DNA from: Macrostomum lignano
Lineage: Eukaryota
Direction: 5' to 3'
Length of the DNA stretch: 64,000 nt
Assembly: GCA_002269645.1 (NCBI GenBank)
Contig: NIVC01000886.1
Coordinates: 186,001-250,000 of the forward strand
Positions 10,874 through 58,674 of this stretch are shown here, piece after piece (the first letter of the stretch is position 1; each line of letters begins with the position of its first letter). A program made the translations under genes and the position numbers. The notes beneath the pieces are model-generated. The model saw only the letters and a list, made by a program, of their open reading frames with translations. It was not told the origin of the DNA and did no database searches.

Positions 10874-11528
<655 letters not shown>

Positions 11529-19760: not shown

Positions 19761-20324
19761 TCCTATTCTGTAGGACACCCCGATGTTGAGGCGGACATTG
19801 CCCAGTTCTCATTGGGACACTTCGGCTTCAAGTGGACATCCCTGTTTATTAATTATAATTCTAGTCTTACAGTAAACACTTTTCTCTGTCCTTGGGATGG
19901 ACAGGACACCCCAGTGATCAAGCAGACACCCCAAATGTGACATCCCATTTGGTATCGGATTTTCCCGTCGAAGCCTTCCCTTCGGGGCCGTCACTGAGGC
20001 TCGGTTTTTTATCTTCTTAAGTCCCTCTCTCTGCTCAGCGTTTAATCCCGGAGGCTTATGGGTGAGAATTCAGTTCGCCTATGGAATTGTCGATGATATT
20101 CGACCTGCCCGGCAACTCCAGCTTCGTGTCCCCCCCCAATGCTCTCTTTTGGCTTAAATACATCAATTTCTATTCTTTATTATGCGGCTGCCGAATCGGA
20201 CAGAATGTATGGCCCATCATTTATTGCCATAAATTTCCCATATTTAGGAATGGAGCGAGAGTCAGCCTGGCCTGGAGTCGTAGTTTTGTCAGATAATGCG
20301 ATGGGGAAAGATGACAGGGGAACT

Positions 20325-20372
20325 GAGAGAGTGAGAGTGAGAGAGAGAGTGAGTGAGAGTGAGAGAGAGAGT

Positions 20373-20408
<36 letters not shown>

Positions 20409-20426
20409 AGGAGAGATGGTAAAAGA

Positions 20427-20457
<31 letters not shown>

Positions 20458-20568
20458 GGAAGGGGAGATGGTAAAAGAGTGAGAGAGAGAGAGAGAGAGA
20501 GAGGGAAGGAGAGATGGTAAAAAAGTGTGAGAGAGAGAGAGAGGGAAGGAGAGATGGTAAAAGAGTGT

Positions 20569-20604
<36 letters not shown>

Positions 20605-21480
20605 AGGGGAGATGATAAAAGAGTGTGAGAGAGAGAGAGAGTGAGAGAGAGAGGGAAGGAGAGATGGTAAAAGAGTGTGAGAGAGAGAGAGTGAGAGAGA
20701 GAGGGAAGGAGAGATGGTAAAAGAGTGTGACAGAGAGAGTGAGAGAGAGAGGGAAGGAGAGATGGTAAGAGTGTGAGAGAGAGAGAGTGAGAGAGAGAGG
20801 GAAGGAGAGATGGTAAAAGAGTGTGTGAGAGAGAGAGAGAGTGAGAGAGAGTGAGAGAGAGAGGGAAGGAGAGATGGTAAAAGAATGTGAGAGAGAGAGA
20901 GTGAGAGAGAGAGAGGGAAGGAGAGATGGTAAAAGAATGTGAGAGAGAGAGTGAGAGAGAGAGAGGGAAGGAGAGATGGTAAAAGAGTGTGTGAGAGAGA
21001 GAGAGTGAGAGAGAGTGAGAGAGAGAGGGAAGGAGAGATAGTAAAAGAATGTGAGAGAGAGAGAGTGAGAGAGAGAGGGAAGGAGAGATGGTAAAAGAGT
21101 GTGAGAGAGAGAGTGAGAGAGAGAGGGAAGGAGAGATGGTAAAAGAGTGTGAGAGAGAGAGTGAGAGAGAGAGAGGGAAGGAGAGATGGTAAAAGAGTGA
21201 GAGAGAGAGAGAGTGAGAGAGAGTGAGAGAGAGAGGGAAGGAGAGATGGTAAAAGAATGTGAGAGAGAGAGTGAGAGAGAGAGGGAAGGAGAGATGGTAA
21301 AAGAGTGTGAGAGAGAGTGAGAGAGAGAGAGGGAAGGAGAGATGGTAAAAGAGTGTGAGAGAGAGAGAGAGAGTGAGAGAGAGTGTGAGAGAGAGTAAGA
21401 GAGAGAGTGAGAGAGAGTGAGAGAAAGAGAGTGAGATAAAAGAGAGAGAGAGAGAGAGATTGATGGAGAGAAGGAGAGAC
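20325..21480. repeat. Compound GA-rich array
   Basis: gagagggaaggagagatggtaaaagagtgt followed by a variable (ga)n spacer. Confidence 0.95.
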
Positions 21481-21735
21481 ATAAGAGGGAGAGAGATACA
21501 TTAGAAGAAGCGATGGAAGAGACCAGGCGGGGAAAGAAAAAGCGGAGCGAGATGAAGGGCCGAAAGATGTAGATTGGCAGCTGAGCGGACAAGGTATGCC
21601 TGAGAATCTCTAATTCCACTTTAAACTTCAAAAAACTTATTATACTACTTACCTGGGCTCTAACTGTGAGTAGCAATTTCCTGATCTGCAGATAACTAAA
21701 TACCAGACCCCCCGTCTGTGCCTCAACACCTGCAG

Positions 21736-22111
21736 CACCGATGCATCACAGGAGCAGCAAGTGGAGCGCCAGAGTCAGCCACTGAAGACCGCCAAGCTGG
21801 CAGCATCTCTGGATGCCTGTCTCACCTGGCTCCGCGACGCCGGCGGTGCAGCTGCAGAGGCCGAGACCTGGCTGTCAGGCCTGACCCACTGGGACGATTT
21901 GCCCGGCTTGAGAAAAGTGCAAGCTCGATTCGAAGCCCTGCAGATCGGCCTGGAAGCTGAGGGAATCCGGTTGAAGGCTCTTCAAGATGAGGCTGCGGCT
22001 GCTGGAGGCTGTGGGAATGGCGCAGTCGCTTCTGCGGAGGTCAACGGGAAGGATTCCGCCGGCAAAGCGGATGTTGAGGAGGCTGAGGAGATCCGGGATC
22101 GGCTGGATGAG
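21736..22111 (+). CDS. Dys: Dystrophin-family rod exon E2 (phase 2-0); alternative phase-0 acceptors at 21691, 21706 and 21751
   Basis: Acceptor cccccgtctgtgcctcaacacctgcag with branch-like taactaa about 40 nt upstream; donor GAG|GTGAAT at 22112. Encodes LAASLDACLTWLRDA...RKVQARFEALQIGLEAEGIRLKAL...EIRDRLDE, a spectrin-repeat pattern. The 5' boundary is uncertain. Confidence 0.75.
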
Positions 22112-22175
22112 GTGAATCTTGCATTCTTAGAAATGGGATTATTTCATGTTATTTAATGTGCGAGCAATACGATCC

Positions 22176-22641: not shown

Positions 22642-22934
22642 GCCAGCACTGAGTACCGTCGGCTGCAGCAGGTCTTCTCAGACCGTCAGCTCGCACTGGA
22701 GCACTCAGTCAGCCAGCTGGAGTCGCTACTCACCGACATCAACGACCTGACGGCGTGGACGCGAGCCCAGCTGGTGAGCTCGCCTCCAGCGGCGGCCTCT
22801 GACATGTCTGCTGAGCAGCGGCTGCAGCTGGCGGACATTGATGATGAAGCGTGGACTCAACGCACCGACTCAATGCAGCGGCTGAGAGAGCAGCTGGATC
22901 ATGTGACCCAATGCGATTTGCGGGATCCCGCCAA
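22642..22934 (+). CDS. Dys: Dystrophin-family rod exon E3 (phase 0-2)
   Basis: Acceptor ctcattcaccccag and donor AA|GTGAGT. ASTEYRRLQQVFSDRQLALEHSVSQLESLLTDINDLTAWTRAQL continues the E2 helix as a spectrin C-to-A junction. Confidence 0.8.
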
Positions 22935-23099
22935 GTGAGTGCCGAAACTCAAATCACAGAGGGTGCACAATGTGTACACTGCCGATGAGCTAGTCGGGGC
23001 CGCTGTACCCACTGTCTGAGCACGTGTGTTTGCGTCCGTACGTGTCGTGTGCGCGGAGTGAGCACAGCTGCCTGCCTCCTCTGCTGTTAATCTGTCCTC

Positions 23100-23560
23100 G
23101 CTTTAGAATCGCCCCTTTAAAATTGGCCCACATAATCGCTATCTAGAATCGCCTAAGGAACCACCCGTAAAAATCGCCACTAAGAAACAACCCTTTAGAA
23201 CCACCCCTCAAGAATTGCCCCTTAAAATGGCCCTTTTAGAATAATCGCCCTTTTAAAATCGCCCTTTCAGAATCACCTCTTTAGAATCACCCCTAAAATC
23301 GTTATTTTAGAATCGCCGTAAAATAGAGCCCTAAAAATCGCCCCTAAGAATCGCCCTTTTATAACCGCCTTTTAAGAATCACCCCTAAGAATCGCCCCTA
23401 AGAAATCGTCCCTAAGAATCGCCCCTAAGAAATCGTCCCTAAGAATCGCCCTTTCAGAATCACCCCTTTAGAATCACCCTTTAAGAATCACCCTTTTAGA
23501 ATCGCCCATTACCGCTAAGAAATCGCCCTTCAAAATCGCCACTAAGGGATCGCCATGAGA
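23100..23560. repeat. Degenerate 13-15-bp array
   Basis: Unit approximately tttagaatcgccc(c). Confidence 0.85.
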
Positions 23561-23648
23561 ATTACCCATGAATCTATCCAGGTTAAATGTCAGTGACATG
23601 CATTCATTAGCATCCAGCTAATTCTATGTAAACTGTCTCAAACTTCAG

Positions 23649-23955
23649 CTGCTCAGGCACCCAGCAGCAGCATCCAAAGCGCAAGCTGAAATCCTCAGAC
23701 GAGATGCGACGCCGTCTCAGCGAGCTGGAGCAAAACTGGCTCCAATTGATGGAGCTTCGAGCGGCTGTGTGCTCCGAGGAAGTGAAAGAAGTCCGTCAGC
23801 AGCAGGTGCAGCAGGAGAAGCATCAGCAGCAGCAGCAGAAACAGCGAGATGATCAGAAGCTGAAGCACCAGCCAGTAGCCGAGTGGTTAGAAAGGTCGCA
23901 GGCTTTTCTTACCAGTCAACGCGTCGTGATTGGTCGGATTTTCGACGGAGACGAC
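23649..23955 (+). CDS. Dys: Dystrophin-family rod exon E4 (phase 2-0)
   Basis: Acceptor tctcaaacttcag and donor GAC|GTGAGT. AA+C gives Asn in frame with E3. Encodes EMRRRLSELEQNWLQLMELR...VAEWLERSQAFL, a spectrin pattern with a Q-rich insert. Confidence 0.8.
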
Positions 23956-24626: not shown

Positions 24627-24795
24627 TCCGAGTTATCCCAGCAATCGGTGGGCAGTCTCGACAGCCTCTCGCCTGCCGAAGCTCTGGCTAAAGCGAAATC
24701 ATTGCTGACTGAGCTGGACACCCGTCACAGGCAGAGTCTGCGCGAGGTGAAAGCAACGCTTAGACGGAAACCCGAGTCTGCTAATGCCGCCCTGG
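24627..24795 (+). CDS. Dys: Dystrophin-family rod exon E5 (phase 0-1)
   Basis: Acceptor ttttcaatactccatcag and donor G|GTGAGA at 24796. SELSQQ...ALAKAKSLLTELDTRHRQSLREVKATLRR; the phase matches E6. Confidence 0.75.
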
Positions 24796-29805: not shown

Positions 29806-30444
29806 GACAGTCAGACAGTGTCATGCACACACAGTCAGCACATGCAGGCTAGGTCATCTACCCACACGCATGATATCATAACTGGGTAAACTGATTTTCC
29901 AGAAGCTACTGAAATGAAGCGAGGGGTTTAGAGGAGATGATGAGCGGAGAGGAGAAGAGGAGAGAGAGAGAGAGAGAGAGGGGGAACGAGAGAGGCTCCT
30001 GGGAAGCGCTGAAGCAGTGTGGTTGGGTCACTTGAAATCAGTGTGTACTCACTATATGCACAACAGCCTCTAACCAACCTTCTTGGCTCTCCGGCTCTCG
30101 CATCTTCTTCACGTCTTTTTTTGTTGCCAACAGGGCAAACTGTTTCTAACGAAAAAATATGCACGAACAGGCATATAACACAAAGAATATATGCATATAC
30201 ACGCGAAACTTCCTATAGACCCGATGTCCAGCCACTTGTCGCAGCTGGGGTTAAACATGACACACTGCAGCTGGCAACTGGGACCGGCGTGGAGATTTCC
30301 AGATTCGTCTCCGCCTCCTCCAATCGCCGATCTGTCCCGCGAGCTTTAGTTGCTAGCCGAAAGCAGGAGGGAAGAAAGTTAAAAAGCAGCCCAAGGGCCC
30401 TCGCTCGGACAGTCTGTAACCGGACAAGTCGGACGGACACAAAA

Positions 30445-31957
30445 ATGTCTGGCTACTGGAACAAATTCGGCCAGGTGTTCCGCGCCACCAAGGCGCTCTC
30501 GTCGGCGTCGTTGAACCTGTTCGATGACGGAGCGGAAGATGGCGAGGATGGCATCGCCGGGAGCAGCGGCGACGGGGGTGCCAGCGAACCGCTGCCAGAC
30601 CTCGGCGGCATCACCGGCTGGATCGCCAAGCGCGCCTCGGTGGTGCTCAGCGACTGGGATCTCAACAGTGACGACGAAGACTACGACGAATCGGATGATA
30701 ACGAAGTCCGCAACGCCGACAGTCGAATCCCGTTCGAGATTCCCAGCCTGCGGAACGCCAGACAGGCTGGCAAGCTGCGCAGTCTGGAGGACCGGCTGCG
30801 AGACGGCGCCGCAGCCAGCGTCGCTGCATCCGCCGCTGCCGCCGCTGCCGCCGCCGCCGCCGCCTCCGCCACCTCAGCAGCTCCATCAGCTTCAACAGCC
30901 GCCTCAGCATCCGCTAGCATGGGCAGCAGCCCGACCCCGAGTCCGGCGCACCTGTCCCGCAGGCAGCAGCCAGCCAGACAACCGTCTCAGCGAGGCTCTT
31001 CGTTGAGGGAGACAAGTCGAAGACCGCTGCACTCTGTGCCGCCTCCGCTGCCGCCGCCGCCTCAGCTGCCGCCGCCGCCACAGCAACTTCAAAAATTAGA
31101 AGCTTCTAAAGCTTATGAGGCTCAAAGCCAGAAGCATGAACACCAGGCTCAGCCTGCGAATCAATCGTTACCATCGACTCAGCAACAGGAATGCACAGCT
31201 CAGCCACTTCAACCACCAACTCAGCAACCGGAGCCTATGACTCAGCAAAGTCAATCTCCAGCTCAAAAAACTGAGTCTCCTAGTCAGAAACTTCAAAAAC
31301 CCACTCAGCAATCTCCTCCGACTTCGCTACCGCAATCTCCGGTTCATCAATCTCAACCATCGACTCAGCAATCTGAACCATCGACTCAGCAATCTGAACC
31401 ATCGACTCAGCAATCTGAACCATCGACTCAGCAACCTGAATCATCGACTCAGCAATTTAAAACAACAAATCAGCAAACTCTTCGAAATCAGCAACTTCCA
31501 CCGAATCAGCAACATCAACTATCAGCTCAGCAACCTCAACAATCGACTCAACAACTTCGAACACCAAATCAGCAGCCTCAACCTTCGACTCAGCAACCTG
31601 AACCACAGACTCAGCAACCTCAACCTTCGACTCAGCAAACTGAACCAAATACTCAGCAACCTCAACCTTCGACTCAGCAACCTGAACCACAGACTCAGCA
31701 ATCTCAACCTTCGACTCAGCAACCTGAACCACAGACTCAGCAACCTCAAACGCAGCCCAAAAAACCACCTCAGCAGCGCCCACTGCCGCCGCCGCCCCGA
31801 CCGCCCAGACCGGTCTCCAAGCCGTTAGTCTTTGCGGGAACTCCAGCAGCAGTTGTCAAGGAAACCAACTCTGAGAGGAAGAACTCCGACTCGCCTGTTT
31901 CCAATAAGGATGGAGGTTTTCATTCAAAGAATGAAGAGACTGGAAACTCATCAGATG
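30445..31957 (+). CDS. Large Q/P-rich alternative exon of the dystrophin gene (first exon from ATG 30445, or cassette exon from acceptor 30133)
   Basis: ATG in caaaaATG context, GC-rich coding-like codons (MSGYWNKFGQVFRATKALSS...), about 504 codons, donor G|GTCAGT at 31958 in phase 1, the same phase as E5. The frame is also open upstream to a strong phase-1 acceptor (tcttttttt gttgccaacag, 30133). Confidence 0.65.
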
Positions 31958-32007
31958 GTCAGTATGGGCGCTTCTGGTTTAGGGTAGCTTTAGAGTAGAT
32001 TTTTGGG

Positions 32008-32429
<422 letters not shown>

Positions 32430-33042
32430 TTCCGTTTTAAAATCTTTCTATTTTCTCACAGTGAACCCAGTGTCAAAGCAGCCAGTGAAGCTAAGTAACT
32501 TCATCCGCCAGGCAAAATCACACACCGATTCTCAAAGCAGTCTCAAGGCAGTTTGCTGCCAATTAGCAGGGGATTTGAGCTGGGGGTTGCCAGGCTGGGA
32601 GCATTAATTAGCCCAAATTCCGTTGCCAAGCCAAGTGGCATCCGTGCCGGTGCATCGCAGAATTGAATGCATTAAGATGGGCCAATATTCAAATCCCCTC
32701 CGTATAATGGGGAATTCAATTGGTTTGTTGTGAAGAAAATTTGCATGCAGATGGGTCGAAGCGCACGTAGTGTTATTCATATATATAGTGAGGCAGGAGT
32801 TCAATACTTCTAGCTGAGAGGCACTTTATAACCAATGGAAAACTTCATTGCTTTATTACTCTCAACAGAATATAAGTTTATTTATAAGAAACTTTATATA
32901 GAATTCTGATTTTATATAGGGTAAATTTAGATTTGTACTTTTACTTTTTAGATTTAGAAACTGTAACTTAGTCTGTTTTTTCTTCAATTAATGTTATACA
33001 TATATATTATATATTGTATCTTTGTAAATTTAGGTATATTGG

Positions 33043-33442
33043 GAGACACAAGGACACATACGGAAACACAGGGAGAGACAGGGAGAAACAGGGAGACACA
33101 GGGAGACACAGGGAGACACAGGGAGACACAGGGAGACACAGGGAGACACAGGGAGACACAGGGAGACACAGGGAGACACAGGGAGACACAGGGAGACACA
33201 GGGAGACACAGGGAGACACAGGGAGACACAGGGAGACACAGGGAGACACAGGGAGACACAGTGAGACACAGGGAGACACAGGGAGACACAGGGAGACACA
33301 GGGAGACACAGGGAGACACAGGGAGACACAGGGAGACACAGGGAGACACAGGGAGACACAGGGAGACACAGGGAGACACAGGGAGACACAGGGAGACACA
33401 GGGAGACACAGGGAGACACAGGGAGACACAGGGAGACGGGGA
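33043..33442. repeat. (CAGGGAGACA)n 10-bp array
   Basis: Near-perfect; the unit also occurs as a variant in the 29150 array. Confidence 0.95.
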
Positions 33443-34119
33443 GACAGTAGATTAGTTGCCAGGCGCATGCAAGCTGTCGATTTTGTCACCTTAAGAGTTG
33501 GCGGATGGGAACGGCAGATCGATGCCCCATCTCCCCAAGCTTCAGCGCACACGGCTATTGTCGGCTAAAAGCCAAGTAAGGAAAAATTCAGAAAATGAAG
33601 TTAGGAAAAAGGGAAGGAAGGAAGTTAAGGCGGAGACTGACTGCATCGTCGGGTGTCATCATCAAAAATACCTGTGCTAAGCTAGCTGTTTTCCTGGGAA
33701 TTGGGATATATTGTCAGGACTTGGGCTTATCCTATATAGCTAGCATGCATGCTGTTAAAAGTTTATATCGAAGCAGAGCAGGGAAATGATTGATTGTATC
33801 CCCGATCTCAGTGGCTGGTAGGCTTTCGGTCTCTGTACTTTAATATGAGTAGTTAGTTATAGGTTTGGCTCTGGGCTTCCTGCTTTCTTAGAAGGCAAAC
33901 TACTTGGGTCTCTGAGAGTCAACCGCTGGGGCTTTGAGGACACTCCCTGTGTGAGATGCTAATTTTGAGCTGGAGGAATTCCAGTTATAAGTATAGACTT
34001 AGTATTGTAGTAATATGGGTGTACTTGGCAGTGTGCAGAGGCGGCTCTGGATAAAAGTCAGGGACTGCTCAGAAGATAAATGTGTGACTATTCAGTGAAT
34101 AAGTCTGGGACTATTGAGA

Positions 34120-34700
34120 GGAAAAATTTAGGACTATTTAGTTGAGAAAGCTGGGACTATTTAGTTGAGAAATCTGGGACTATTTAGTTGAGAAATCTGG
34201 GACTATTTAGTTGAGAAAGCTGGGACTATTTAGTTGAGAAATCTGGGACTATTTAGTTGAGAAATCTGGGACTATTTAGTTGAGAAATCTGGGACTATTT
34301 AGTGAAGAAATCTGGGACTATTTAGTATGGATATCTGGGACTACTTACTAGAGAAACCTGGGACTGTTTAGTTGAGAAATCTGGGACTATTTAGTTGAGA
34401 AATCTGGGACTATTTAGTGAAGAAATCTGGGACTATTTTGTATGGATATCTGGGACTACTTACTAGAGAAACCTGGGACTGTTTAGTTGAGAAATCTGGG
34501 ACTATTTAGTTGAGAAATCTGGGACTATTTAGTGAAGAAATCTGGGACTATTTAGCAATGAAATCTGGGACTATTTAGTAGAGAATCTGGGACTATTTAG
34601 TATAGAAATCTGGGACTATTTAGTATGGATATCTGGGACTACTTACTAGAGAAACCTGGGACTGTTTAGTAAAAAGACCTGGGACTATTTAGTAAAGAAT
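34120..34700. repeat. 23-bp minisatellite
   Basis: Unit ctgggactatttagttgagaaat. Confidence 0.95.
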
Positions 34701-35044
34701 AATAATAATTTGGTCTTGTTTGTCTACTTAGGTGAGTAGTAAGCTAAGCAATATATTGCGGTTATTTTTTCATTTTCCACTCAAAACAGGAAGCTGGTTA
34801 AATCTCTTGAAATTCGCTAGCAACAATGAAAGCTTTGACTCGAAAATTTTTTTAAGAGCCACTTCAAAGAAAATATTTATTAAACATTTTTCAAGGATCA
34901 TTGATTCTTATTGTGGTTAGATTATTCCCAACTTTGAGTTCAATTCAGGTTGTGTATTGTGTAAATTCGAAAATATGGTCAAGTAGCGGCTTTTATTATA
35001 AATGGCCCATTCTAGCTTGAGATAAATTTTCAAGGGAAATATAG

Positions 35045-35505
35045 GTGGAGTTTCGGCGGTAATTCGGATATAGTTTGGGGGGAATTCTGGTGGAGTTTGG
35101 GGGAATTCTGGTGAAGTTCCGGGGGAATTCAGGTGAAGCTTTGGGAAAAATTCAGGTGGAGTTTCGGGAGAATTCAGGTAGAGTTTCGGGGGAATTCAGG
35201 TGGAGTTTCGGGGGAATTCAGGTGGAGTTTTGGGGGTGAATTCAGGTGGAGTTTCGGGGGAATTCAGGTGTAGTTTCGGGGGAATTCAGGTGGAGTTTCG
35301 GGCGGAATTCAGGTGGAGTTTCGGGCGGAATTCAGGTGGAGTTTCGGGGGAATTCAGTTGGAGTTTCGGGGAATTCAGGTGGAGTTTTGGGGAAATTCAG
35401 GGGAAGTTTCGGGGGAATTCAGGTGGAGTTTTGGGGGGAATTCAGGTGGAGTTTCGGGGGAATTAAGTTGGAGTTTCGGTGAATTTAGGTGGAGTTTTGG
35501 GGTGA
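35045..35505. repeat. 22-bp G-rich minisatellite
   Basis: Unit ggtggagtttcgggggaattca. Confidence 0.9.
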
Positions 35506-36149
35506 ATTTGAAAGCTTTGTATTCCTCATATTGATTTCATTTTCGGCACCACAACCTTCAAAAACCCGATTGGATCAATAGACAGGTTCAAAAGAATAGG
35601 AACGTTCTGAACCGTATTCGTTCATTTTTTCTACAATTCACGAGTGCTCAAGTTAAACAGGCCATCATAAAGCATTCTATACATGTAGCCTCATCTACCC
35701 TTCCCCCCAACCCCTGATGAGGCGGGAGCAGCCCAGCTTCCTGGGCGAAAGTTTCTTCGCATGGCTTCTTCGGTGAGGAAACAACCTCTAACGGAGCCTG
35801 CAGCCCGCCCCCAACCCAAACCCCATCGCCATCCATCTCGGGGCATAAGAAACACGAGGGGGGAGGCAGCCACAGTGTACAGGGCATGCCCTGGCTCAGT
35901 GCTGGAGTCGGGACGGAGGGCAGAGAGCCACACTGGCTCTCGCCCGCCCGCTAGCAAAATAATTCAAGGAGACCCGTATGGACCAAAATCTGGAGTGCAG
36001 ATTCTGCTGCCTCAGACCCTCAAATCCTAGTCAGTTAGTAGACACCTGCAGCATCTGCGCCCCCCCCCCTCGGGCAGTGGGCAACTCGGATTTACGGCAT
36101 TTTCGAAGAAGGTTGGACTTCACCGCTCCAATCCTCACTTCATTTCTCC

Positions 36150-37020
36150 AATATTCTCTCCTCTCTCCTCTATCCCCTCTCCTCTATCCCCTCTCCTTTC
36201 TCCCCCTTCTCTTTTCCCTATCCTACCTCTTCTCTCTTATTTCTTTTTTTCCTCTCCTCTCTCCTCTCTCTCCTCTCTTCTCTCTCCTCCCCTCTCTCTC
36301 TCTCTCCTCCTCCCCTCTCTCTCTCTCCTCTCCTCTCTTCCTTCTCTTCTCTCCTCTCTCTTCTCTCTCCTCTCCTCTCTCCCTTCTCTTCTCTCCCCTC
36401 TGCTCTTTCCTCTCTCATGTCTCCTGTCTCCTTTCTCCCCCTTCTCTCTTCACTCTCCTACATCTTCTCTCCTCTCTAATTTCTCTTTTTTCCTCTCCCC
36501 TATCATCTCTCTGATCTCCCCTCTTTTTTCTTCACTCTTTTCTCTTTTCTCCCATCTCCTCTCTCCTTTCTACCGTCTTCTCTCTTCCATCTCCCACCTC
36601 TTCTCTCCTCTCTCATTTCTCTTTTATCCTCTCTCCTCTCCTCTATCCCCTCTCCTCTCTCTCCTCTCCTCTCTCTCCTCTCCTCTCTCTCCTCTCCTCT
36701 CCTCTCCTCACTCTCCTCTCCTCTCTCTCCTCTCTTCTCTGTCCTCTCCTCTCCTCTCCTCACTCTCCTCTCCTCACTCTCCTCTCCTCTCCTCTCTCTC
36801 CTCTCCTCTCTCTCCTCTCCTCTCCTCTCTCTCTTCTCCTCTCTCTCCTCTCCTCTCCTCTCCTCACTCTCCTCTCCTCTCTCTCCTCTCTTCTCTGTCC
36901 TCCCCTCTCCTCTCTCTCCTCTCCTCTCTCTCCTCTCTTCTCTGTCCTCCCATCTCCTCCCTGTCCTCTCTCTCCTCTCTCCTCTCCCCTCTGCTCTTTC
37001 CTGTCTCCTGTCTCCTCTTT
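36150..37020. repeat. Polypyrimidine (CT-rich) array
   Basis: Degenerate (ctcct/ctct)n. Confidence 0.9.
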
Positions 37021-38052
37021 CCCGCACGTTTTCAATTTAAAATTTGCGCGCTCCACACTCAATCATTGACTTCTCACTTTTTCTTGCGTTTGTACCGGTG
37101 AGCACCTGCCTTTAAAATATTCGCGATCATATTAGCCCTGAAAAAGAGTATAAAATATTCGAAATAGAGTTTGGAGTTTGAGTGCTTTTCCCTTACTGCT
37201 CTCTCTTCTTAGGTACTAAATATGCTGGTTTAGACAGGTAGAGAACCTCTGAGCACCCGATTGATCTCAACAATCACAACAGTCTCGCCAATATTATAAA
37301 AAGTTTCCCACTCCAGATCTTTTTAGTTCACAGTCTGCTTGGCTCTTCCCCTTTTAGTTGTGGGCCCAAGCTTTTCCTCCTTACTCTCCCGTGCATCCCT
37401 CAGCACCCCCCCAACCTTCTTGTTCTCTCGTTCTCTCCCTAATCCGACTAAGGTCATGGATTTTTACTAGGATGAGAATTAATTATCTATCCGAATTGAA
37501 ACTTTACTTCATAGAATAATAAAAATAGCAAGCCTTTCCCTTTGTTTGAAATTATTAAACTTTTTAGAATTCAAACAATACAAATGAAAATTCAAAAATT
37601 CACCTGACTCGTCTTTAAACATGAATGTTTAATCATTTTTTCACTCCAGATTCCTTATTCTAGAGCTCCATGAGCACATTGGACATCCGAGGCCCAATAG
37701 GCCCATCCAACAACCTCTCTCCCACCTCCCCCCTCTCCCTCCGGCCTAAAAAAAAAAGCTTTTTCGCACATCTCCTTCAAGGCCGTTCCTTCACTGCGCT
37801 GCCTCAGATCCTTTAGTTAAATGCCATCGCCGCCTCCTTACCTCACTGGGGCATCCACTGATCTGAGTTGAGATAATACAGAGGTACAAAGCTACACCTT
37901 CTACCTGAGGTGTGAAATATTTTGAGTATTTGTGCCCTGCTGTGTTGCTTGTGTCTCTTCTGGCTGAATTGGTGAGTGCCTTCAGATCAGATTGCTTTAT
38001 TGAGGAATAGATGTGAAGAGATAGATAGATAGATAGCACAGTGAAGGATAGT

Positions 38053-39378
38053 AGAAAAAGGGAGATAGTAGACACAGAGAGGGAGATAGTAGACACAGAG
38101 AGGGAGATAGTAGACACAGAGAGAGATAGTAGACACAGAGAGGGAGATAGTAGACACAGAGAGGGAGATAGTAGACACAGAGAGGGAGATAGTAGACACA
38201 GAGAGGGAGATAGTAGACACAGAGAGGGAGATAGTAGACACAGAGAGGGAGATAGTAGACACAGAGAGGGAGATAGTAGACACGGAGAGGGGGATAGTAG
38301 ACACGGAGAGGGGGAGATAGTAGACACGGAGAGAGGGGGATAGTAGACACGGAGAGGGAGATAGTAGACACGGAGAGAGGGGGATAGTAGACACAGAGAG
38401 GGAAATAGTAGACACGGAGAGAGGGAGATAGTAGACACGGAGAGAGGGAGATCGTAGACACGGAGAGGGGGGGATAGTAGACACGGAGAGAGGGGGATAG
38501 TAGACACGGAGAGAGGGAGATAGTAGACACAGAGAGGGAGATAGTAGACACGGAGAGGGAGATAGTAGACACGGAGAGAGGGAGATAGTAGACACGGAGA
38601 GAGGGAGATCGTAGACACGGAGAGGGGGGGATAGTAGACACGGAGAGAGGGAGATAGTAGACACAGAGAGGGAGATAGTAGACACAGAGAGGGAGATAGT
38701 AGACACGGAGAGAGGGAGATAGTAGACACAGAGAGAGGGGGATAGTAGACACGGAGAGAGGGAGATAGTAGACACAGAGAGAGGGGGATAGTAGACATAG
38801 GTAGGGAGATAGTAGACACAGAGAGGGAGATAGTAGACACGGAGAGAGGGAGATAGTAGACACAGAGAGAGGGGGATAGTAGACACGGAGAGAGGGAGAT
38901 AGTAGACACAGAGAGAGGGGGATAGTAGACATAGGTAGGGAGATAGTAGACACAGAGAGAGGGGGATAGTAGACACAGAGAGGGAGATAGTAGACACAGA
39001 GAGGGAGATAGTAGACACAGAGAGGGAGATAGTAGACACAGAGAGGGAGATAGTAGACACAGAGAGGGAGATAGTAGACACAGAGAGGGAGATAGTAGAC
39101 ACAGAGAGGGAGATAGTAGACACAGAGAGGGAGATAGTAGACACGGAGAGAGGGAGATAGTAGACACAGAGAGGGAGATAGTAGACACAGATAGGGAGAT
39201 AGTAGACACAGAGAGGGAGATAGTAGACACAGAGAGGGAGATAGTAGACACAGAGAGGGAGATAGTAGACACAGAGAGGGAGATAGTAGACACAGAGAGA
39301 GATAGTAAACACAGAGAGGGAGATAGTAGACACGGAGAGGGAGATAGTAGACACGGAGAGAGGGAGATAGTAGACAGA
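38053..39378. repeat. 22-24-bp minisatellite
   Basis: Unit gag(ag)agggagatagtagacac(a/g). Confidence 0.95.
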
Positions 39379-39683
39379 GAGCGATACAATGGGCAGAGCA
39401 AAAGTGTAGGCTAGACAATATTTCATTAATTTCCATAAGAAAAGCTACCAGAGCCAATTTCGTTGTGTTGCAAAGTGAATTCCTGCCCGAACTTTCTGTT
39501 CGATCCGACGCCTCCCTGCGGTTTCTCTATGAGAGCTGAGTGCAGAAACTTCTCTGTAGAGCTGGTTTCTCTAAATTTATCTCTGAGTCCTCATTCATTA
39601 AGGATTGATTTGCTTCGCTGCCACTCAGTTTGGTCTACTTTTTCTATCCTAAAGTGCATAAACACTGGTCATATGTGGTGTCT

Positions 39684-41360
<1,677 letters not shown>

Positions 41361-41989
41361 CCAATCAGCCTCTTTAAATTATTAGCCCCAATAGTAGTCC
41401 CTAAGGCTATTACGTAATCGAAGGTGCTACGCAGATTAGCTCAGAGCTGTCAGGCTGCCACTTACGCAATCGTCGCAGTACTTGACCCCTGTAATCAGCT
41501 TTGTATTATGGCTCACAATGAATTTTATCCACTCTACCATATAGAAAGCATCTAATTTGTCTTGACAGAGCGCAAATGACTAACAAAACTTCTATTCAAT
41601 GAGCCAGCTCTTTCATTACCCACGCGAATAAAGTAAAATCTCTTTAGCTTTTCCCTGTGACCTGAGCTCCAGTTTTGGGAATATTTTCCAACCCTATAAC
41701 TATGACGGGTATTCTAAATGTAATCTCATTGCAATTTAGACGGGATGAAGAAGGGATTAGTGAAGAAAGGAGGCTCGAGGTTAGCTCAAAAAACCGTTTC
41801 TTTTGCGCAATGAAATGCACGAGTCGAGCGAGTTTGTCGACCGAAAGTTTTTGCTGAATCACGGCGCCCCTTTGACTCGCGAACCGTGTAGGAGTAATGA
41901 GTGAGGGCGCTGACTGAGAGGCCTGAGGCACGGTTACTGTGGGAGGTGGAGAGAGAAATACACTGATGGTGGAGATAATGGGTGAGAGA

Positions 41990-42400
41990 GAGAGGGAGAT
42001 AGAGAGGAGGAGAGAAGGAGAGGGAGAGAAGGAGAGGGAGAGAAGGAGAGGGAGAGAAGAAGAGGGAGAGAAGGAGAGGGAGAGAAGGAGAGGGAGAGAA
42101 GGAGAGGGAGAGAAGGAGAGGGAGAGAAGGAGAGGGAGAGAAGGAGAGGGAGAGGGAGATGGAGAGAAGGAGAGGGAGAGAAGGAGAGGGAGAGAAGGAG
42201 AGGGAGAGGGAAAGAATGAGAGGGAGAGAAGGAGAGGGAGAGAAGGAGAGGGAGAGGGAGAGAAGGAGAGGGAGAGAAGGAGAGGGAGAGAAGGAGAGGG
42301 AGAGGGAAAGAATGAGAGGGAGAGAGGGAGAGAGAGAGAAGGAGAGGGACGGGAAGAGAAGGAGAGGGAGAAGGAGAGGGAGAGGAGAGAAAGACGAAGA
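41990..42400. repeat. GA-rich 14-bp array
   Basis: Unit gagagggagagaag. Confidence 0.9.
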
Positions 42401-42704
42401 GTAGGGGAGGAAGGGGCAGGAATGGGATCTGAGAAGTGCATCCCCACCGAAGAGTCAAGTGTGCATCAGAGCTAGAATGCTAGCAGACTCATCTGCAGAG
42501 CGGAACATTTGCAGAAATGCTTTATTTTCCCAAAGCAAACATTATTGTAACGCAGTAATTTTTTCCCAGGAAGAAACTAAATACCCCTTAACGTTACAGT
42601 TGGAAGGACTGCACAAATTAATAAATGATAAGTTAGCCGTATTGCTTACTGAATATTCTTCTAGTGGAAAACCCGGCTTTTACTGCATTTAGCGGGAAAA
42701 TTTG

Positions 42705-44385
42705 AAATGCGTCAGTAGATTCTAATTGAAATGTGTCAGTAGATTCTAATTGAAATGTGTCAGTAGATTCTAATTGAAATGTGTCAGTAGATTCTAATTG
42801 AAATTTGTCAGTAAATTCTAATTGAAATGTGTCAGTAGATTCTAATTGAAATTTGTCAGTAAATTCTAATTGAAATGTGTCAGTAGATTCTGATTAAAAT
42901 GTGTCAGTAGATTCTAATTGAAATTTGTCAGTAAATTCTAATTGAAATGTGTCAGTAGATTCTAATTGAAATGTGTCAGTAGATTCTAATTGAAATGTGT
43001 CAGTAGATTCTAATTGAAATTTGTCAGTAAATTCTAATTGAAATGTGTCAGTAGATTCTGATTAAAATGTGTCAGTAGATTCTAATTGAAATGCGTCAGT
43101 AGATTCTAATGGAAATGTGTCAGTAGATTCTAATGGAAATGTGTCAGTAGACTCTAAGTGAAATGTGTCAGTAGATTCTAATTGAAATGTGTCAGTAGAC
43201 TCTAATTGAAATGTGTCAGTAGATTCTAATTGAAATGTGTCAGTAGATTCTAATTGAAATGTGTCAGTAGACTCTAATTGAAATGTGTCAGTAGATTCTA
43301 ATTGAAATGTGTCAGTAGATTCTAATTGAAATGTGTCAGTAGACTCTAATTGAAATGTGTCAGTAGATTCTAGTTGAAATGCGTCAGTAGATTCTAATTG
43401 AAATGTGTCAGTAGACTCTAATTGAAATGTGTCAGTAGATTCTAGTTGAAATGCGTCAGTAGATTCTAATTGAAATGTGTCAGTAGATTCTAATTGAAAT
43501 GTGTCAGTAGATTCTAATTGAAATGTTTCAGTAGACTCTAATTGAAATGTGTCAGTAGATTCTAATTGAAATGTGTCAGTAGATTCTAATTGAAATGTTT
43601 CAGTAGACTCTAATTGAAATGTGTCAGTAGAATCTAAGTGAAATGTGTCAGTAGATTCTAATTAGGATTTGTCAGTAGATTCTTATTGAAATGCGTCAGT
43701 AGATTCTAATTGAAATGTGTCAGTAGATTCTAATTGAAATTTGTCAGTAATTTCTAATTGAAATGTGTCAGTAGATTCTAATTGAAATTTGTCAGTAATT
43801 TCTAATTGAAATGTGTCAGTAGATTCTAATTGAAATGTGTCAGTAGATTCTAATGGAAATGTGTCAGTAGACTCTAATTGAAATGTGTCAGTAAATTCTA
43901 ATTGAAATGTGTCAGTAGAATCTGATTGAAATGTGTTAGTAAATTCTAATTGAAATGTGTCAGTAGAATCTGATTGAAATGTGTCAGTAAATTCTAATTG
44001 AAATGTGTCAGTAGATTCTAATTGAAATGTGTCAGTAGATTCTAATTGAAATGTGTCAGAATTTTCTAATTGAAATGTGTCAGTAGATTCTAATGGAAAT
44101 GTGTCAGTAGACTCTAATTGAAATGTGTCAGTAGATTCTAATTGAAATGTGTCAGTAGATTCTAATTGAAATGTGTCAGTAGATTCTAATTGAAATGTGT
44201 CAGTAGATTCGGATTGAAATGTTTCAGTAGATTCTAGTTGAAATGTGTCAGTAGATTCTAATTGAAATGTGTCAGTAGATTCTAATTGAAATATGTCAGT
44301 AGATTCGGATTGAAATGTGTCAGTAGATTCTAGTTGAAATGTGTCAGTAGATTCTAATTGAAATGTGTCAGTAGATTCCAATGAA
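42705..44385. repeat. 24-bp minisatellite, about 70 copies
   Basis: Unit gtgtcagtagattctaattgaaat. Confidence 0.97.
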
Positions 44386-44528
44386 AAGTTGTCAGCAGAT
44401 GAGTAGATAAGTCAGGTTTCAGTGAAAGTCAAAGAAAAAAGTGTGTCAGGTAGTGCTTGTCAGCTGAAACAGTCTGTGTCAGATTCATAAACCAAGTGAG
44501 TTTATGACCCTCCGCCCGCCACCCGCAG

Positions 44529-45172
44529 CCGCTGCCACTGTAGCGAGTTGCGAAGCGACCGAACGAAATCTGCAGCAGCGCAGAGCCGAGATGGAGGAGG
44601 CGGCCATCGAGCTGCGCCAGTGGGAGCAGCTGTGCCGCCAGACCGAGTCGCTGCTCAGTCAAGTCGCCGACGGCCCGGCGCCGCCGCCAACAGAGCTGGT
44701 CCGACAGCTCGAGAGTCTCATCGACAGCGGCGAACTGCTCAGATCCAAGTACTCCGGAGAGGACACTCAACCGCTGCGTCAGAGACTCGCTCGACTGTCG
44801 GCGACTCTTGCCGGCATTCGAGGAGCTGGCGGCGGAGCTGCGGCGACCTCCTGCAGCAACGGAGCGGCGCTCGAGGACGACTCGCAGCCGCCGCCACAGC
44901 CGCCGCCACAGCCGCCGCCGAAACCCAACGCTGCGGTGGTGGCGGCCGCGGCGGCCAGGCGTCGACGAGAGAGCGGCGGCGGCGATCCCGACGGCTGCGA
45001 CCGGCTGGCCAACGGGGCCGCTGAGGATGCAAGCAAAACGGGAGATGCTGCGGCCGGTGATGAGGCCACAGTGGCAAAACTGGAGACCAGGGCCGCCTGC
45101 TGGGAGGAGCGGCTGGCGGCTGCGGCTGCGGGAACTGCGGAAGATGGAGGAGGAGAGGACGCGTGGCTGAAG
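44529..45172 (+). CDS. Dys: Dystrophin exon E6: end of R20, R21, low-complexity insert, start of R22 (phase 1-0)
   Basis: Acceptor ccgcccgccacccgcag and donor AAG|GTGAGG. NLQQRRAEMEE...QWEQLCRQTESLLSQV resembles human HLQNRRQQLNE...QWLEAKEEAEQVLGQA, and KYSGEDT (YSGEDT at 44750-44767) resembles DYSADDT of R21 (recalled sequences). Confidence 0.85.
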
Positions 45173-45204
45173 GTGAGGCTGGGGTTGCGACTGTCAGTGC
45201 TGCG

Positions 45205-54857: not shown

Positions 54858-55668
<811 letters not shown>

Positions 55669-57885: not shown

Positions 57886-58005
57886 AATAAGAGACATAAG
57901 TATTGGTATTTTGAATTCTCAAAGGATTTGATGTCCCCATGTAGTCCCCATGTAAATAAGCATCAAACTCCAGCTCACAAAACTAGTTGGTCTCCCACCT
58001 CCCAG

Positions 58006-58674
58006 GACCTCGACGCCGAGAGTTTGCTGCACTCCGCCGAACTGGAGATCCTGTCGCATCGCTACGCCAACGTGTCCTGCGGCGGCACCAGTTCGGATCC
58101 TCGAGCTCGACTCCGGGCTCGGCTGGACAATGTCAACCAGCGCTGGCGACGGCTCGGCGAGCAGGCGGCGGAACTGCGCAGCCGGATTCGTCGCCAGGAG
58201 GACACCGCCTGGCAGGGCATGCTGGCCAGGCTGAAGAGTCTCAACGATTGGCTCGCCAGTCGAGACGCTGGACTTCGTCAGCGACAGCTCCTGCTGGGTG
58301 GCGACAGCGCCTCGCTACGCCAGCAGATCAGCGAGCACGAGACTCTTGTCGGCGAGTTGCAGTCGCGTCGAATCGAAGTTGAGCAGGCCCTGGAGCAGGG
58401 CGAGAGCTACTTCGGTCAGCAAGACTTCGCAGGTGGGCAGCAGCAGCAGCAGCAGCAGCAGCAACTCCCGCGGCCAGCCAGTGCGATGAGTCAGAGCGGG
58501 CACGAGTCCGGAGCTGAATCAGAGGACGCCGGAGGCGAAGGCGAAGACCAGCAGCAGCCGCAGCAGAAAAATCTGCGACTGACGCGACGGATTCGAAGGA
58601 ATTTGCATCAACTGAAACGGCGATGGCTGGAGTTGAACTTGCGAGTTAGAGAGTACCAGGAGAAGCTGCAGCAG
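58006..58674 (+). CDS. Dys: Dystrophin exon E7: R22-R23 (phase 0-0)
   Basis: Acceptor tctcccacctcccag and donor CAG|GTTGGT. RLDNVNQRW..L...AAELRSRI...W..MLARLKSLNDWL...LGGDSASLRQQ...HE...LTRRIRR...W parallels human RLDNMNFKWSELRKKSLNIRSHL...WL..KDDEL...IGGDFPAVQKQNDVH...VTRLLRK (recalled). Confidence 0.92.

What the first reader, a model, noticed from the sequence alone, without database searches (positions are those of the whole stretch)
30134..31957. A 1.5-1.8 kb Q/P-rich exon hidden in a dystrophin intron: Dp186-like first exon or giant cassette exon
Seen: a stop-free frame ends at a donor (G|GTCAGT, 31958) in phase 1, the same phase as E5 (24795) and the E6 acceptor (44529). It has two possible entries. 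One is ATG 30445 (caaaaATG), giving a 504-aa unique N-terminus. The other is a strong acceptor at 30133, also phase 1, giving a symmetric 1824-nt (608-codon) cassette; more than 100 open codons upstream of the ATG favour coding there too. Content: possible amphipathic MSGYWNKFGQVFRATKAL, acidic DWDLNSDDEDYDESDD, SRIP (SxIP-like, 30721, but in acidic context), poly-Ala, poly-Pro (PPPLPPPP, PPPPRPPRP), and in-frame 21/42-nt repeats (STQQSEP, 31355-31745). Established (recalled): Drosophila Dp186 joins a long unique N-terminus to the last few spectrin repeats. Inference: the first-exon model would give the same architecture (R21-R24 onward) with an unrelated N-terminus, or else a titin-PEVK-like disordered spring inside the rod.
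Basis: partly seen in the sequence, partly recalled or inferred. Interest (0 to 1): 0.8.

Follow-up and report, generated by a model that had tools for sequence, protein, structure and literature searches.

The report
Probable short-isoform first exon, flatworm dystrophin
Inside a 20-kb intron of the dystrophin gene of the flatworm Macrostomum lignano lies a real-looking protein-coding stretch that most likely starts a shorter dystrophin with a roughly 500-residue disordered head, as in the fly isoform Dp186, but no transcript data could be reached to prove it.

Summary
A stop-free + strand frame runs 30013-31998. It contains ATG 30445, an acceptor-like site at 30133/30134 and a donor GATG|GTCAGT at 31957/31958. 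Both sites are in phase 1, matching the E5 donor (24795) and the E6 acceptor (44529).

The host gene is a dystrophin: exon 58006-58674 matches insect, mollusc and flatworm dystrophins. The genome is Macrostomum lignano, a flatworm that uses SL trans-splicing, not an arthropod.

The host-like codon signature covers only 30445 to about 31090. The 311 nt between the acceptor and the ATG look non-coding, although their lack of stops is unusual (P about 0.003-0.01). The 21-nt repeat array keeps its frame but shows no amino-acid constraint.

No homologue of the new N-terminus exists in any database searched. A constitutive exon of the same gene is also missing there, so that absence says nothing about expression.

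My best reading (about 0.5) is an alternative first exon. It would give a Dp186-like short dystrophin with a 504-aa unique N-terminus, joined about 250 aa upstream of the conserved RLDxxNQRW landmark; the fly figures are 512 aa and 212 aa. Rivals are a nested intronless gene, a cassette exon and an unexpressed ORF. Splicing and expression remain untested.

The parts
24627..24795 (+). Host exon 'E5' of the dystrophin rod. Donor CTGG|GTGAGA, phase 1.
   Evidence: It is part of the 807-aa rod model that hits dystrophins.
30013..30444 (+). Stop-free leader in the ORF frame, with no in-frame ATG. Probably 5' UTR or outron. It contains four out-of-frame ATGs (30159, 30191, 30224, 30257).
   Evidence: No stop in 144 codons, P about 0.001-0.003. 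However, GC3 is .33-.57 and the synonymous-codon score is -0.9 to +0.1, with no frame preference.
30114..30133 (+). Acceptor-like site tctttttttgttgccaacag|G, phase 1. It could be a cis acceptor (cassette model) or a trans-splice acceptor.
   Evidence: There are 23 sites as good or better in the same 19.7-kb intron. It does not match the M. lignano SL-acceptor motif [T/C]TNCAG (motif from PMC8629364).
30265..30302 (+). Two matches to the M. lignano SL-acceptor motif. CTGCAG| has first exon base 30271, where the leader's terminal AUG would be in frame with the ORF and add 58 codons. TTCCAG| has first exon base 30303 and is out of frame.
   Evidence: About 0.8 such matches are expected by chance in 432 nt (my estimate from the motif's degeneracy), so these are leads only.
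30445..30828 (+). Start codon (caaaaATG) and an acidic 128-aa N-terminal region (net charge -12). This segment has the strongest coding signature.
   Evidence: GC1/2/3 = .66/.49/.79. Codon log-likelihood is +0.26 in frame against -0.46 and -0.17 out of frame. It ranks at the top in the six-frame scan. Single-sequence AF2 gives three low-confidence helices and no fold. No Pfam match.
30829..31098 (+). Low-complexity region rich in Ala, Ser and Pro: poly-Ala, then a basic S/R/Q stretch, then PPPLPPPPQLPPPP.
   Evidence: The synonymous-codon score is still positive in frame up to about 31030.
31099..31761 (+). Q/P/S/T-rich array of 21-nt (7-aa) units, consensus TQQPQPS. It is unique to this locus within the window.
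   Evidence: TRF. The unit is found only here. Spacing departs from the 21-nt period only by -3 and -6 nt. P(no stop) is 0.005-0.08. GC3 is only .285 and third positions show no excess variation.
31762..31957 (+). Tail: RPLPPPPRPPRP (matches SH3-ligand patterns), then a mixed S/K/N-rich stretch that ends at the donor.
   Evidence: The codon signal is ambiguous.
31958..31963 (+). Donor GTCAGT after GATG, phase 1. It matches 5 of 7 consensus positions but has C at +3, so it is outside the GT[G/A]AG class.
   Evidence: It is the only site scoring at least 5/7 in the ORF, and lies 39 nt before the stop.
31996..31998 (+). TAG that would end the protein (517 aa) if the donor is not used. It is followed by (GTCT)105 at 32008-32429.
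   Evidence: No AATAAA or ATTAAA occurs in 31957-34500.
44529..45172 (+). Host exon 'E6'. Acceptor ccgcag|CC is phase 1; donor is AAG|GTGAGG. It is the proposed partner of the 31957 donor and contains a Pro/Ala-rich insert that looks like a hinge.
   Evidence: The C-terminal part aligns to M. lignano 'Dystrophin' paralogues.
58006..58674 (+). Host exon 'E7'. It encodes conserved late spectrin repeats of dystrophin (RLDNVNQRW ... LNDWLASRD ... LKRRWLEL).
   Evidence: Pfam Spectrin, weak, E 0.017. phmmer hits to dystrophins. BLASTP E 2e-13 to Malaya dystrophin. tblastn of the hits maps to 58003-58713.

Best explanation
The stretch 30445-31957 is the coding part of an alternative first exon of the Macrostomum lignano dystrophin gene. 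Transcription, or SL trans-splicing, would begin inside the E5-E6 intron somewhere in about 30040-30440. Translation would start at ATG 30445. After 504 codons the donor at 31957 would be spliced to the E6 acceptor at 44529 in phase 1.

The product would be a short dystrophin without the actin-binding head and most of the rod. In their place it would carry a lineage-specific, largely disordered N-terminus with four parts:
- an acidic 128-aa segment;
- a poly-Ala / Pro-rich linker;
- about 30 copies of a TQQPxPS heptad;
- a PxxP-rich tail.
This would be fused to the last few spectrin repeats and the C-terminal dystroglycan-binding region, as in Drosophila Dp186.

Shown: the ORF and its sites, the phase compatibility, the codon signature, and the dystrophin identity of the host. 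Inferred: transcription start, use of the donor, and function. Plausible functions are a scaffold or SH3/WW-ligand region that targets the isoform.
For: 1. Coding signature. 30445-30828 has the host exons' GC1/2/3 pattern and codon preference in the ORF frame only. In a six-frame scan of the window, only the host exons, an antisense frame of E6, a retrotransposon pol ORF and this segment reach that score.
2. The signature switches on at the ATG. The region 30013-30250 scores -0.5 to -0.9, and 30433-31030 scores +0.14 to +0.38. This favours a start at 30445.
3. The ORF is on the host strand. The only good donor in it sits 13 codons before the stop, in the phase that E6 needs. I estimate a chance of about 0.03 for a donor of that quality in the last 40 nt and in the right phase.
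4. There is no canonical poly(A) signal within 2.5 kb downstream, and no LTR or TIR around the ORF.
5. The host is a dystrophin.
6. A precedent exists with nearly the same geometry. The Dp186-sized D. subobscura isoform has a 512-aa unique N-terminus rich in A, S, P and Q, with PPPLPP and poly-Ala, joined 212 aa before RLDEMNQRW. Here the figures are 504 aa and 252 aa before RLDNVNQRW, including an insert of about 80 aa (PMC2840664).
7. The repeat array keeps its frame. Spacing departs from the 21-nt period only by -3 and -6 nt, and there is no stop (P 0.005-0.08).
Against: - No transcript, junction or orthologue evidence could be obtained.
- The donor GTCAG lies outside the GT[G/A]AG class found at about 65% of M. 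lignano donors.
- The repeat array (a third of the exon) uses A/T-ending codons (GC3 .285), unlike the host, and shows no third-position excess.
- The tail 31762-31956 has no clear coding signal.
- The 144 stop-free codons upstream of the ATG (P about 0.003) are not explained by a plain first-exon model.
- No promoter evidence beyond one Inr-like TCAGT without a DPE.
- The N-terminus has no sequence similarity to the fly Dp186-type N-terminus (E 0.4).
- Only E7 aligns significantly to insect dystrophin. The repeat-level correspondence of the junction is therefore approximate.
Confidence: 0.5

Rival explanations
1. It is an independent, intronless gene nested in the dystrophin intron on the same strand. 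It would make a 517-aa orphan protein from ATG 30445 to TAG 31996. In M. lignano it could be released from the host pre-mRNA by SL trans-splicing at an upstream acceptor plus its own polyadenylation. The donor-like GTCAGT would be fortuitous.
For: - It is a complete ORF with a good start context and its own stop 39 nt after the donor.
- The donor is non-canonical at +3.
- About 30% of M. lignano genes are SL trans-spliced (PMC8629364).
- Acceptor-like and SL-motif sites lie upstream of the ATG.
- There is no homologue anywhere, as expected for an orphan gene.
Against: - No AATAAA or ATTAAA occurs within 2.5 kb of the stop, and a 420-nt (GTCT)n array follows immediately.
- The 13 codons after the donor score as non-coding, though the stretch is very short.
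- A poly(A) site inside the intron on the same strand would truncate host transcripts.
- The in-phase donor at the very end of the ORF would have to be coincidence (about 0.03, my estimate).
Confidence: 0.2
2. It is a giant cassette exon, 30134-31957 (1824 nt, 608 codons, phase 1 at both ends). It would be included between E5 and E6 in some long dystrophin transcripts and insert a disordered Q/P-rich segment into the rod. This could occur alongside use as a first exon.
For: - Acceptor and donor have symmetric phase and match E5 and E6.
- The frame is open through all 103 codons between the acceptor and the ATG (P = 0.013). It is open for 144 codons in all (P 0.001-0.003), while the other two frames carry 4 and 7 stops.
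Against: - 30134-30270 has GC3 .33 and the most negative synonymous-codon score of the locus, with no frame preference.
- Acceptors of this quality occur about once per 860 nt in this intron.
- The composition is not PEVK-like.
- A 608-aa insertion would fall inside a spectrin repeat, in what I read by eye as its B-C loop. I know of no precedent for that in dystrophins.
Confidence: 0.12
3. It is not a functional exon. It would be an unexpressed or only spuriously transcribed ORF, for example a decaying or newly arisen open frame kept open partly by a period-21 minisatellite.
For: - Repeat arrays with a period that is a multiple of 3 routinely give long ORFs in this window.
- The array has unpreferred codons and no amino-acid constraint.
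- There is no homologue and no domain.
- AF2 confidence is low.
Against: - The non-repetitive 650 nt after the ATG carry a codon signature matched only by genuine coding sequence in this window.
- The open frame spans four compositionally different segments, not just the array.
- The array stays free of stops although 4 of 63 possible single substitutions per unit would create one.
Confidence: 0.15

Closest known systems
Drosophila dystrophin short isoform Dp186 (represented here by D. subobscura dystrophin isoform X19, XP_034660514.1, 1683 aa)
   Same: - A unique N-terminus of about 500 aa (512 against 504), encoded by an exon inside a rod intron.
- Both are rich in A, S, P and Q, with PPPLPP motifs and a poly-Ala run.
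- Both join about two spectrin repeats upstream of the conserved RLDxxNQRW helix (212 against 252 aa).
- Both leave about 4 repeats plus the C-terminal domains.
   Different: - The N-termini share no detectable sequence similarity (E 0.4).
- By my by-eye alignment, the junction lies about 23 residues earlier relative to the helix-C tryptophan.
- The flatworm exon has a 21-nt heptad repeat array that the fly sequence lacks.
- Expression and splicing are proven in the fly and untested here.
Mammalian internal-promoter dystrophins (Dp260, Dp140, Dp116, Dp71)
   Same: The principle is the same: promoters inside introns of the rod region give shorter products that keep the C-terminal dystroglycan-binding region (PMC2840664).
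   Different: From my own knowledge, the mammalian unique first exons encode only a few residues or none. They are not a 500-aa disordered domain.
Flatworm SL trans-spliced mRNAs that use the leader's 3'-terminal AUG (Cheng et al. 2006, as cited in PMC9851317)
   Same: - The M. lignano leader ends in ATG (PMC8629364).
- An SL-acceptor motif at 30265-30270 would put that AUG in frame with the ORF and add 58 codons.
   Different: - This rests purely on a motif.
- The motif is expected about 0.8 times by chance in this stretch.
- The tract upstream of it is not pyrimidine-rich.
- No SL-containing reads could be examined.
Titin PEVK-type disordered spring exons
   Same: It is a long, proline-rich, low-complexity, repeat-built segment within a cytoskeletal gene.
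   Different: - The composition is Q/P/S/A/T rather than P/E/V/K.
- The segment is more likely N-terminal than internal.
- The part that would make it an internal cassette shows no coding signature.

Membership tests
Dystrophin (host gene) | Rod exons homologous to the late spectrin repeats of dystrophins | tested here: met
   phmmer of the spliced E2-E7 model gave 27 hits. Those whose names I looked up include 'dystrophin' from Macrostomum lignano, Aplysia, Diaphorina, Eupeodes, Malaya and Drosophila. BLASTP of E7 against Malaya dystrophin gives E 2e-13. Only E7 aligns significantly outside Macrostomum.
Dystrophin (host gene) | C-terminal WW, EF-hand and ZZ domains, and N-terminal CH domains | not testable with these tools
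   These parts lie outside the 64-kb window. The M. lignano paralogue P0019, which aligns to E6-E7, does carry a WW-like PPW motif and ZZ-like cysteines.
Dp186-type short dystrophin isoform | A long unique N-terminal coding exon inside an intron of the distal rod, on the gene's strand | tested here: met
   The ORF runs from ATG 30445 to donor 31957, inside the E5-E6 intron on the + strand, and has a host-like codon signature.
Dp186-type short dystrophin isoform | The unique exon is spliced in frame to the next common rod exon | tested here: inconclusive
   Phase 1 donor and phase 1 E6 acceptor give a continuous reading frame. No junction reads were accessible, and the donor is GTCAG rather than GT[G/A]AG.
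Dp186-type short dystrophin isoform | Its own promoter or transcript 5' end within the intron | not testable with these tools
   There is only an Inr-like TCAGT at 30038 without a DPE, plus SL-acceptor motif matches at chance frequency.
Dp186-type short dystrophin isoform | Junction leaves about 4 spectrin repeats before the WW domain | tested here: inconclusive
   The junction is 252 aa upstream of RLDNVNQRW, against 212 aa in D. subobscura X19. E6 does not align significantly to insect dystrophin, and the WW domain is outside the window.
Dp186-type short dystrophin isoform | Sequence homology of the unique N-terminus to the Drosophila Dp186 N-terminus | tested here: not met
   BLASTP E = 0.4. 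There is compositional resemblance only. The locus may therefore work like Dp186, but it is not shown to be its orthologue.
SL trans-spliced mRNA of M. lignano | Acceptor with the [T/C]TNCAG motif upstream of the start codon, carrying the 35-nt leader in transcripts | tested here: inconclusive
The motif is present at 30265-30270 and 30297-30302, but about 0.8 matches are expected by chance. SL-containing reads could not be examined.
PEVK-like elastic cassette | Internal exon that is coding throughout, with a composition dominated by P, E, V and K | tested here: not met
   30134-30444 lacks a coding signature. The composition is Q .17, P .15, S .135, A .095, T .07.
SxIP (EB1-binding) motif | S/T-x-I-P embedded in a basic, Ser/Pro-rich region free of acidic residues | tested here: not met
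   SRIP lies in ...NEVRNADSRIPFEIPS..., within a 128-aa segment of net charge -12. The context rule is from my own knowledge of the motif.

The most novel reading that the evidence does not exclude
A Dp186-type dystrophin may be ancient rather than an insect peculiarity. That would mean a long, fast-evolving disordered N-terminus, made from an internal start in essentially the same distal-rod intron and fused to the last four or so spectrin repeats. Its presence in a macrostomid flatworm and in flies would place the internal start site in the protostome ancestor. The N-terminal sequence would then have turned over beyond recognition while keeping its length (about 500 aa) and its Pro/Ala/Gln-rich, PxxP-bearing character. 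In the flatworm the 5' end might in addition be made by SL trans-splicing at 30271, with the leader's AUG read in frame.
Probability: 0.12. Interest if true: 0.6.

Novelty: new member of a known kind. Interest (0 to 1): 0.38.

Why it matters
Short dystrophins made from internal promoters are the forms linked to the brain, retina and synapse phenotypes of dystrophin loss. In Drosophila, Dp186 acts postsynaptically at central cholinergic synapses (PMC2840664).

A flatworm counterpart with the same geometry would have two uses:
- It would show whether this isoform class predates insects.
- It would provide a transgenic, regenerating model (M. lignano) for asking what a long disordered N-terminus does on a dystrophin C-terminal module.

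If the ORF is instead an ordinary nested orphan gene or an unused ORF, the finding is routine annotation.

Tried and rejected
- **Word-indexed homology search with the full 504 aa.** No hits. The 8000-candidate list was probably saturated by low-complexity words.
- **Repeat of that search without the low-complexity middle, plus the first 100 aa of E6.** No hits.
- **Exact look-ups of the ORF product from the ATG and from the GTG start.** Not on record.
- **How to read these negatives.** They say nothing about expression. The exhaustive search found no M. lignano entry for the constitutive exon E7 either, where the best hit was a 41%-identical paralogue. This gene is therefore barely represented in the protein collections.
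- **Pfam on the N-terminus.** Nothing.
- **PDB sequence search with the rod model.** Only chance-level hits.
- **Rfam on the whole window.** Nothing.
- **Transposon or retrogene origin.** Rejected. There are no flanking LTRs or TIRs, no copies elsewhere in the window, and no related proteins among 5.8 billion.
- **Arthropod origin.** This was my first guess, from the microsatellites and the caaaATG context. It is rejected: UniRef A0A1I8F819 of M. lignano maps at 97-100% identity.
- **Amphipathic N-terminal helix.** Not above shuffles.
- **AF2 single-sequence model of residues 1-128.** Low confidence (pLDDT 53.7), so I ran no fold search.
- **An earlier in-phase donor that would leave the repeat array intronic.** The only candidate is 31249, CAAA|GTCAAT, scoring 4/7. 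I judged it weaker than 31957.
- **Collinear alignment of E5-E6 to insect dystrophin, to fix the junction repeat exactly.** Only an out-of-register repeat-to-repeat match appeared (E 0.013).
- **Search for the 'WAGSLP' residues of A0A1I8F819 between E3 and E4.** Not found.
- **Unused.** The third homologous-protein search. No remaining query seemed able to change the verdict.
Full report
**1. What is in the sequence**

The + strand frame with codons starting at positions ≡ 1 (mod 3) is free of stops from 30013 to the TAG at 31996-31998, which is 659 codons from the first GTG.
- ATG 30445, in the context caaaaATGtc;
- an acceptor-like tttttttgttgccaacag|GGC at 30133/30134;
- a donor GATG|GTCAGT at 31957/31958.

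Both junctions fall after the first base of a codon (phase 1). The same holds for the donor of the upstream host exon (CTGG|GTGAGA, 24795) and the acceptor of the downstream one (ccgcag|CC, 44528/44529).

Joining 31957 to 44529, and then 45172 to 58006, gives one uninterrupted reading frame of 942 codons within the window. The poly-Ala, the Pro runs, the acidic block, SRIP and the 21/42-nt arrays are all present.

**2. Which organism and which gene**

My spliced model of the flanking exons (807 aa) was scored against 1.84 billion representative proteins.
- The best hit is a 100-aa UniRef entry of the flatworm Macrostomum lignano. It maps back onto the window at 97-100% identity with one frame switch, so it is the same locus in an error-prone older assembly. 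The window is therefore M. lignano or something nearly identical, not an arthropod.
- The other hits whose names I looked up all concern exon 58006-58674. They are named dystrophin (Macrostomum paralogues, Aplysia, Diaphorina, Eupeodes, Malaya, Drosophila subobscura) or are a 3204-aa WW-domain protein of a tapeworm.
- BLASTP of that exon against mosquito dystrophin gives E 2e-13. The alignment runs through the landmarks RLDxxNQRW, LxxW[LV]xxxD and the final helix.

'Dystrophin intron' is thus supported. The WW, EF and ZZ domains lie outside the window.

**3. Is the ORF more than chance?**

Length alone is not evidence. Simple repeats with periods that are multiples of three give many 500-800-codon ORFs in this window. 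The following observations do count.

(a) *Codon signature.* The 384 nt after the ATG have GC at codon positions 1/2/3 of .66/.49/.79, the pattern of the host exons (GC3 .61-.73). Their codon log-likelihood is positive only in the ORF frame.

(b) *Sliding synonymous-codon score.* The score is -0.5 to -0.9 before about 30250, about 0 up to the ATG, and +0.14 to +0.38 from 30433 to about 31030. It turns negative again in the repeat array.

(c) *Six-frame scan.* Among all non-repetitive, stop-free 128-codon windows, the only high scorers are the host exons (the training data), an antisense frame of E6 (a known artefact of GC3-rich exons), a retrotransposon pol ORF and this segment.

(d) *The 21-nt array.*
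- It is unique to this locus.
- Its unit spacing departs from 21 nt only by -3 and -6 nt.
- It has no stop, although 4 of 63 possible substitutions per unit would make one. P is 0.005 if the changes are independent and 0.08 if only distinct variants are counted.
- It uses A/T-ending codons (GC3 .285) and varies most at first codon positions. There is therefore no sign of amino-acid constraint.

(e) *The donor.* The donor at 31957 is the only site in the 2-kb ORF matching at least 5 of 7 consensus positions. Such sites occur once per about 533 nt, and this one sits 39 nt before the stop, in the phase E6 needs. No GT[A/G]AG occurs anywhere in 30013-32010.

I conclude that at least 30445 to about 31090 is very probably coding. 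The rest of the frame is plausibly coding but unconstrained.

**4. How is it entered?**

However, 23 sites as good or better lie in the same 19.7-kb intron. The 311 nt between it and the ATG show no coding signature: GC3 is .33 for 30136-30270. This favours ATG 30445 as the start, which is the first-exon model.

One observation does not fit. The frame is open for 144 codons upstream of the ATG, while the other two frames carry 4 and 7 stops. Simulation gives P of 0.001-0.003, or 0.013 for the 103 codons after the acceptor. I cannot explain this away, and it keeps the cassette model alive.

Because the organism is M. lignano, a third entry is possible.
- About 30% of its genes receive a 35-nt spliced leader ending in ATG.
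- The enriched trans-acceptor motif is [T/C]TNCAG (PMC8629364).
- Two such motifs lie upstream of the ATG. At the first (first exon base 30271), the leader's AUG would be in frame with the ORF and add 58 codons.
- Flatworm leader AUGs are known to serve as initiators (Cheng et al. 2006, cited in PMC9851317).
- About 0.8 motif matches are expected by chance in this stretch, so this is a lead, not a result.

The Inr-like TCAGT at 30038 has no DPE.

**5. How does it end?**

If the donor is not used, the protein ends 13 codons later at TAG 31996 (517 aa). This is the nested-gene rival. Three points count against it:
- no AATAAA or ATTAAA occurs in the next 2.5 kb;
- a 420-nt (GTCT)n array follows at once;
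- the in-phase donor would have to be coincidence.

In its favour, GTCAG is not in the GT[G/A]AG class that marks about 65% of M. lignano donors. Another host donor in this window, CAG|GTTGGT at 58674, is also outside that class.

**6. The protein**

The 504 aa divide into four segments:
- an acidic segment (residues 1-128, net charge -12);
- an Ala/Ser/Pro-rich linker with a basic patch and PPPLPPPPQLPPPP (129-218);
- about 30 heptads of consensus TQQPQPS (219-439);
- a tail with RPLPPPPRPPRP, which fits SH3-ligand patterns (440-504).

Other results:
- There is no Pfam family.
- Single-sequence AF2 gives three low-confidence helices and no fold, pLDDT 53.7.
- The proposed amphipathic helix is not above shuffles.
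- SRIP sits in an acidic context.
- No PPxY is present.

The most economical functional reading is a disordered scaffold or ligand region. This is inference.

**7. Comparison with Dp186**

The review PMC2840664 states that the fly isoforms Dp186, Dp205 and Dp117 carry unique N-termini conserved among Drosophila species, and that Dp186 keeps 4 spectrin repeats.

The Dp186-sized D. subobscura isoform retrieved here departs from long dipteran dystrophin at residue 513 (VTRLREHW...), which is 212 aa before RLDEMNQRW. In the window the junction is 252 aa before RLDNVNQRW, including a Pro/Ala-rich insert of about 80 aa in E6.

By eye, both junctions precede helix C of the same repeat, about 23 residues apart. 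E6 does not align significantly to insect sequences, however, so this is approximate.

The two N-termini are of equal length and similar composition, with PPPLPP and poly-Ala, but they share no sequence similarity (E 0.4). The locus may therefore work like Dp186. Orthology is not shown.

**8. Why the database negatives do not count**

Two word-indexed searches and two exact look-ups found nothing for the N-terminus. The same collections also lack any M. lignano entry for the first 100 aa of E6 and for E7. The gene is simply almost unrepresented.

**9. Verdict**

| Reading | Confidence |
|---|---|
| Alternative first exon of a short, Dp186-like dystrophin | about 0.5 |
| Nested intronless gene | about 0.2 |
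| Non-functional ORF | about 0.15 |
| Cassette exon | about 0.12 |

This is a new member of a known kind, of moderate interest. It can be settled within minutes from the existing M. lignano RNA-seq, SL-read and poly(A) tracks.

Noticed in passing
window 60392-63949 (- strand): A 1185-codon ORF carries an integrase zinc-binding domain and an integrase core domain (Pfam Integrase_H2C2 and rve). It looks like the 3' part of an LTR-retrotransposon pol gene. It lies downstream of exon E7, probably within the next intron, and has a strong coding signature.
   Followed up: partly
window 48500-50000 and 50984-52484: Two segments 2484 nt apart are 100% identical over about 1.5 kb, including identical 99-aa and 132-aa ORFs. 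This is either a very recent tandem duplication or an assembly artefact inside the E6-E7 intron.
   Followed up: partly
window 22804-23795 (E3/E4): UniRef A0A1I8F819 (M. lignano) is named 'DUF2630 family protein'. It is in fact a frame-shifted fragment of this dystrophin rod: it maps here at 97-100% identity with a switch from frame 1 to frame 3 at 23754. The database name is wrong.
   Followed up: yes
window about 44820-45065 (inside E6): E6 contains a non-helical insert of about 80 aa, rich in Gly, Ala and Pro (QPPPQPPPQPPPKP, poly-Ala, RRRR), between helices that look like spectrin-repeat helices. The M. lignano paralogue (UniRef A0A1I8GQR0) has a Pro-rich stretch (PKLPPKPPPHRRPDAPPTPP) in a similar but unaligned place. 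This may be a hinge.
   Followed up: no
window 58003-58404, compared with P0004 and P0019: M. lignano has at least one further dystrophin-family gene. Two UniRef 'Dystrophin' entries are only 37-44% identical to E7, so they are paralogues, not this locus.
   Followed up: partly
window 21752-22157 and 22934-23699: My upstream exon boundaries are not clean. The exon at 21752-22144 has no canonical donor before its in-frame stop. The E3 donor (phase 2) and the obvious E4 acceptor (phase 1) do not match, which suggests a micro-exon or different splice sites. The six extra residues 'WAGSLP' in the UniRef fragment were not found in the intron.
   Followed up: partly
whole window, e.g. 3617-5610, 10789-11749, 20180-21676, 37791-41417, 46056-48530, 52646-53904, 54815-55561, 56383-57897: A large share of the window consists of micro- and minisatellite arrays, such as (GTCT)n, (AGAGACTGGG)n, (TCTA)n-like units and GA-rich arrays. 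They create dozens of spurious ORFs of 150-820 codons on both strands. Any ORF-length argument in this genome needs a complexity filter.
   Followed up: partly
window 30013-32010 (+ strand): GT[A/G]AG does not occur at all in this 2-kb stretch, against 170 occurrences on the + strand of the window (about 5 expected). This may be depletion of cryptic donors in an exon, or only a composition effect, since repeat arrays inflate the count elsewhere.
   Followed up: no
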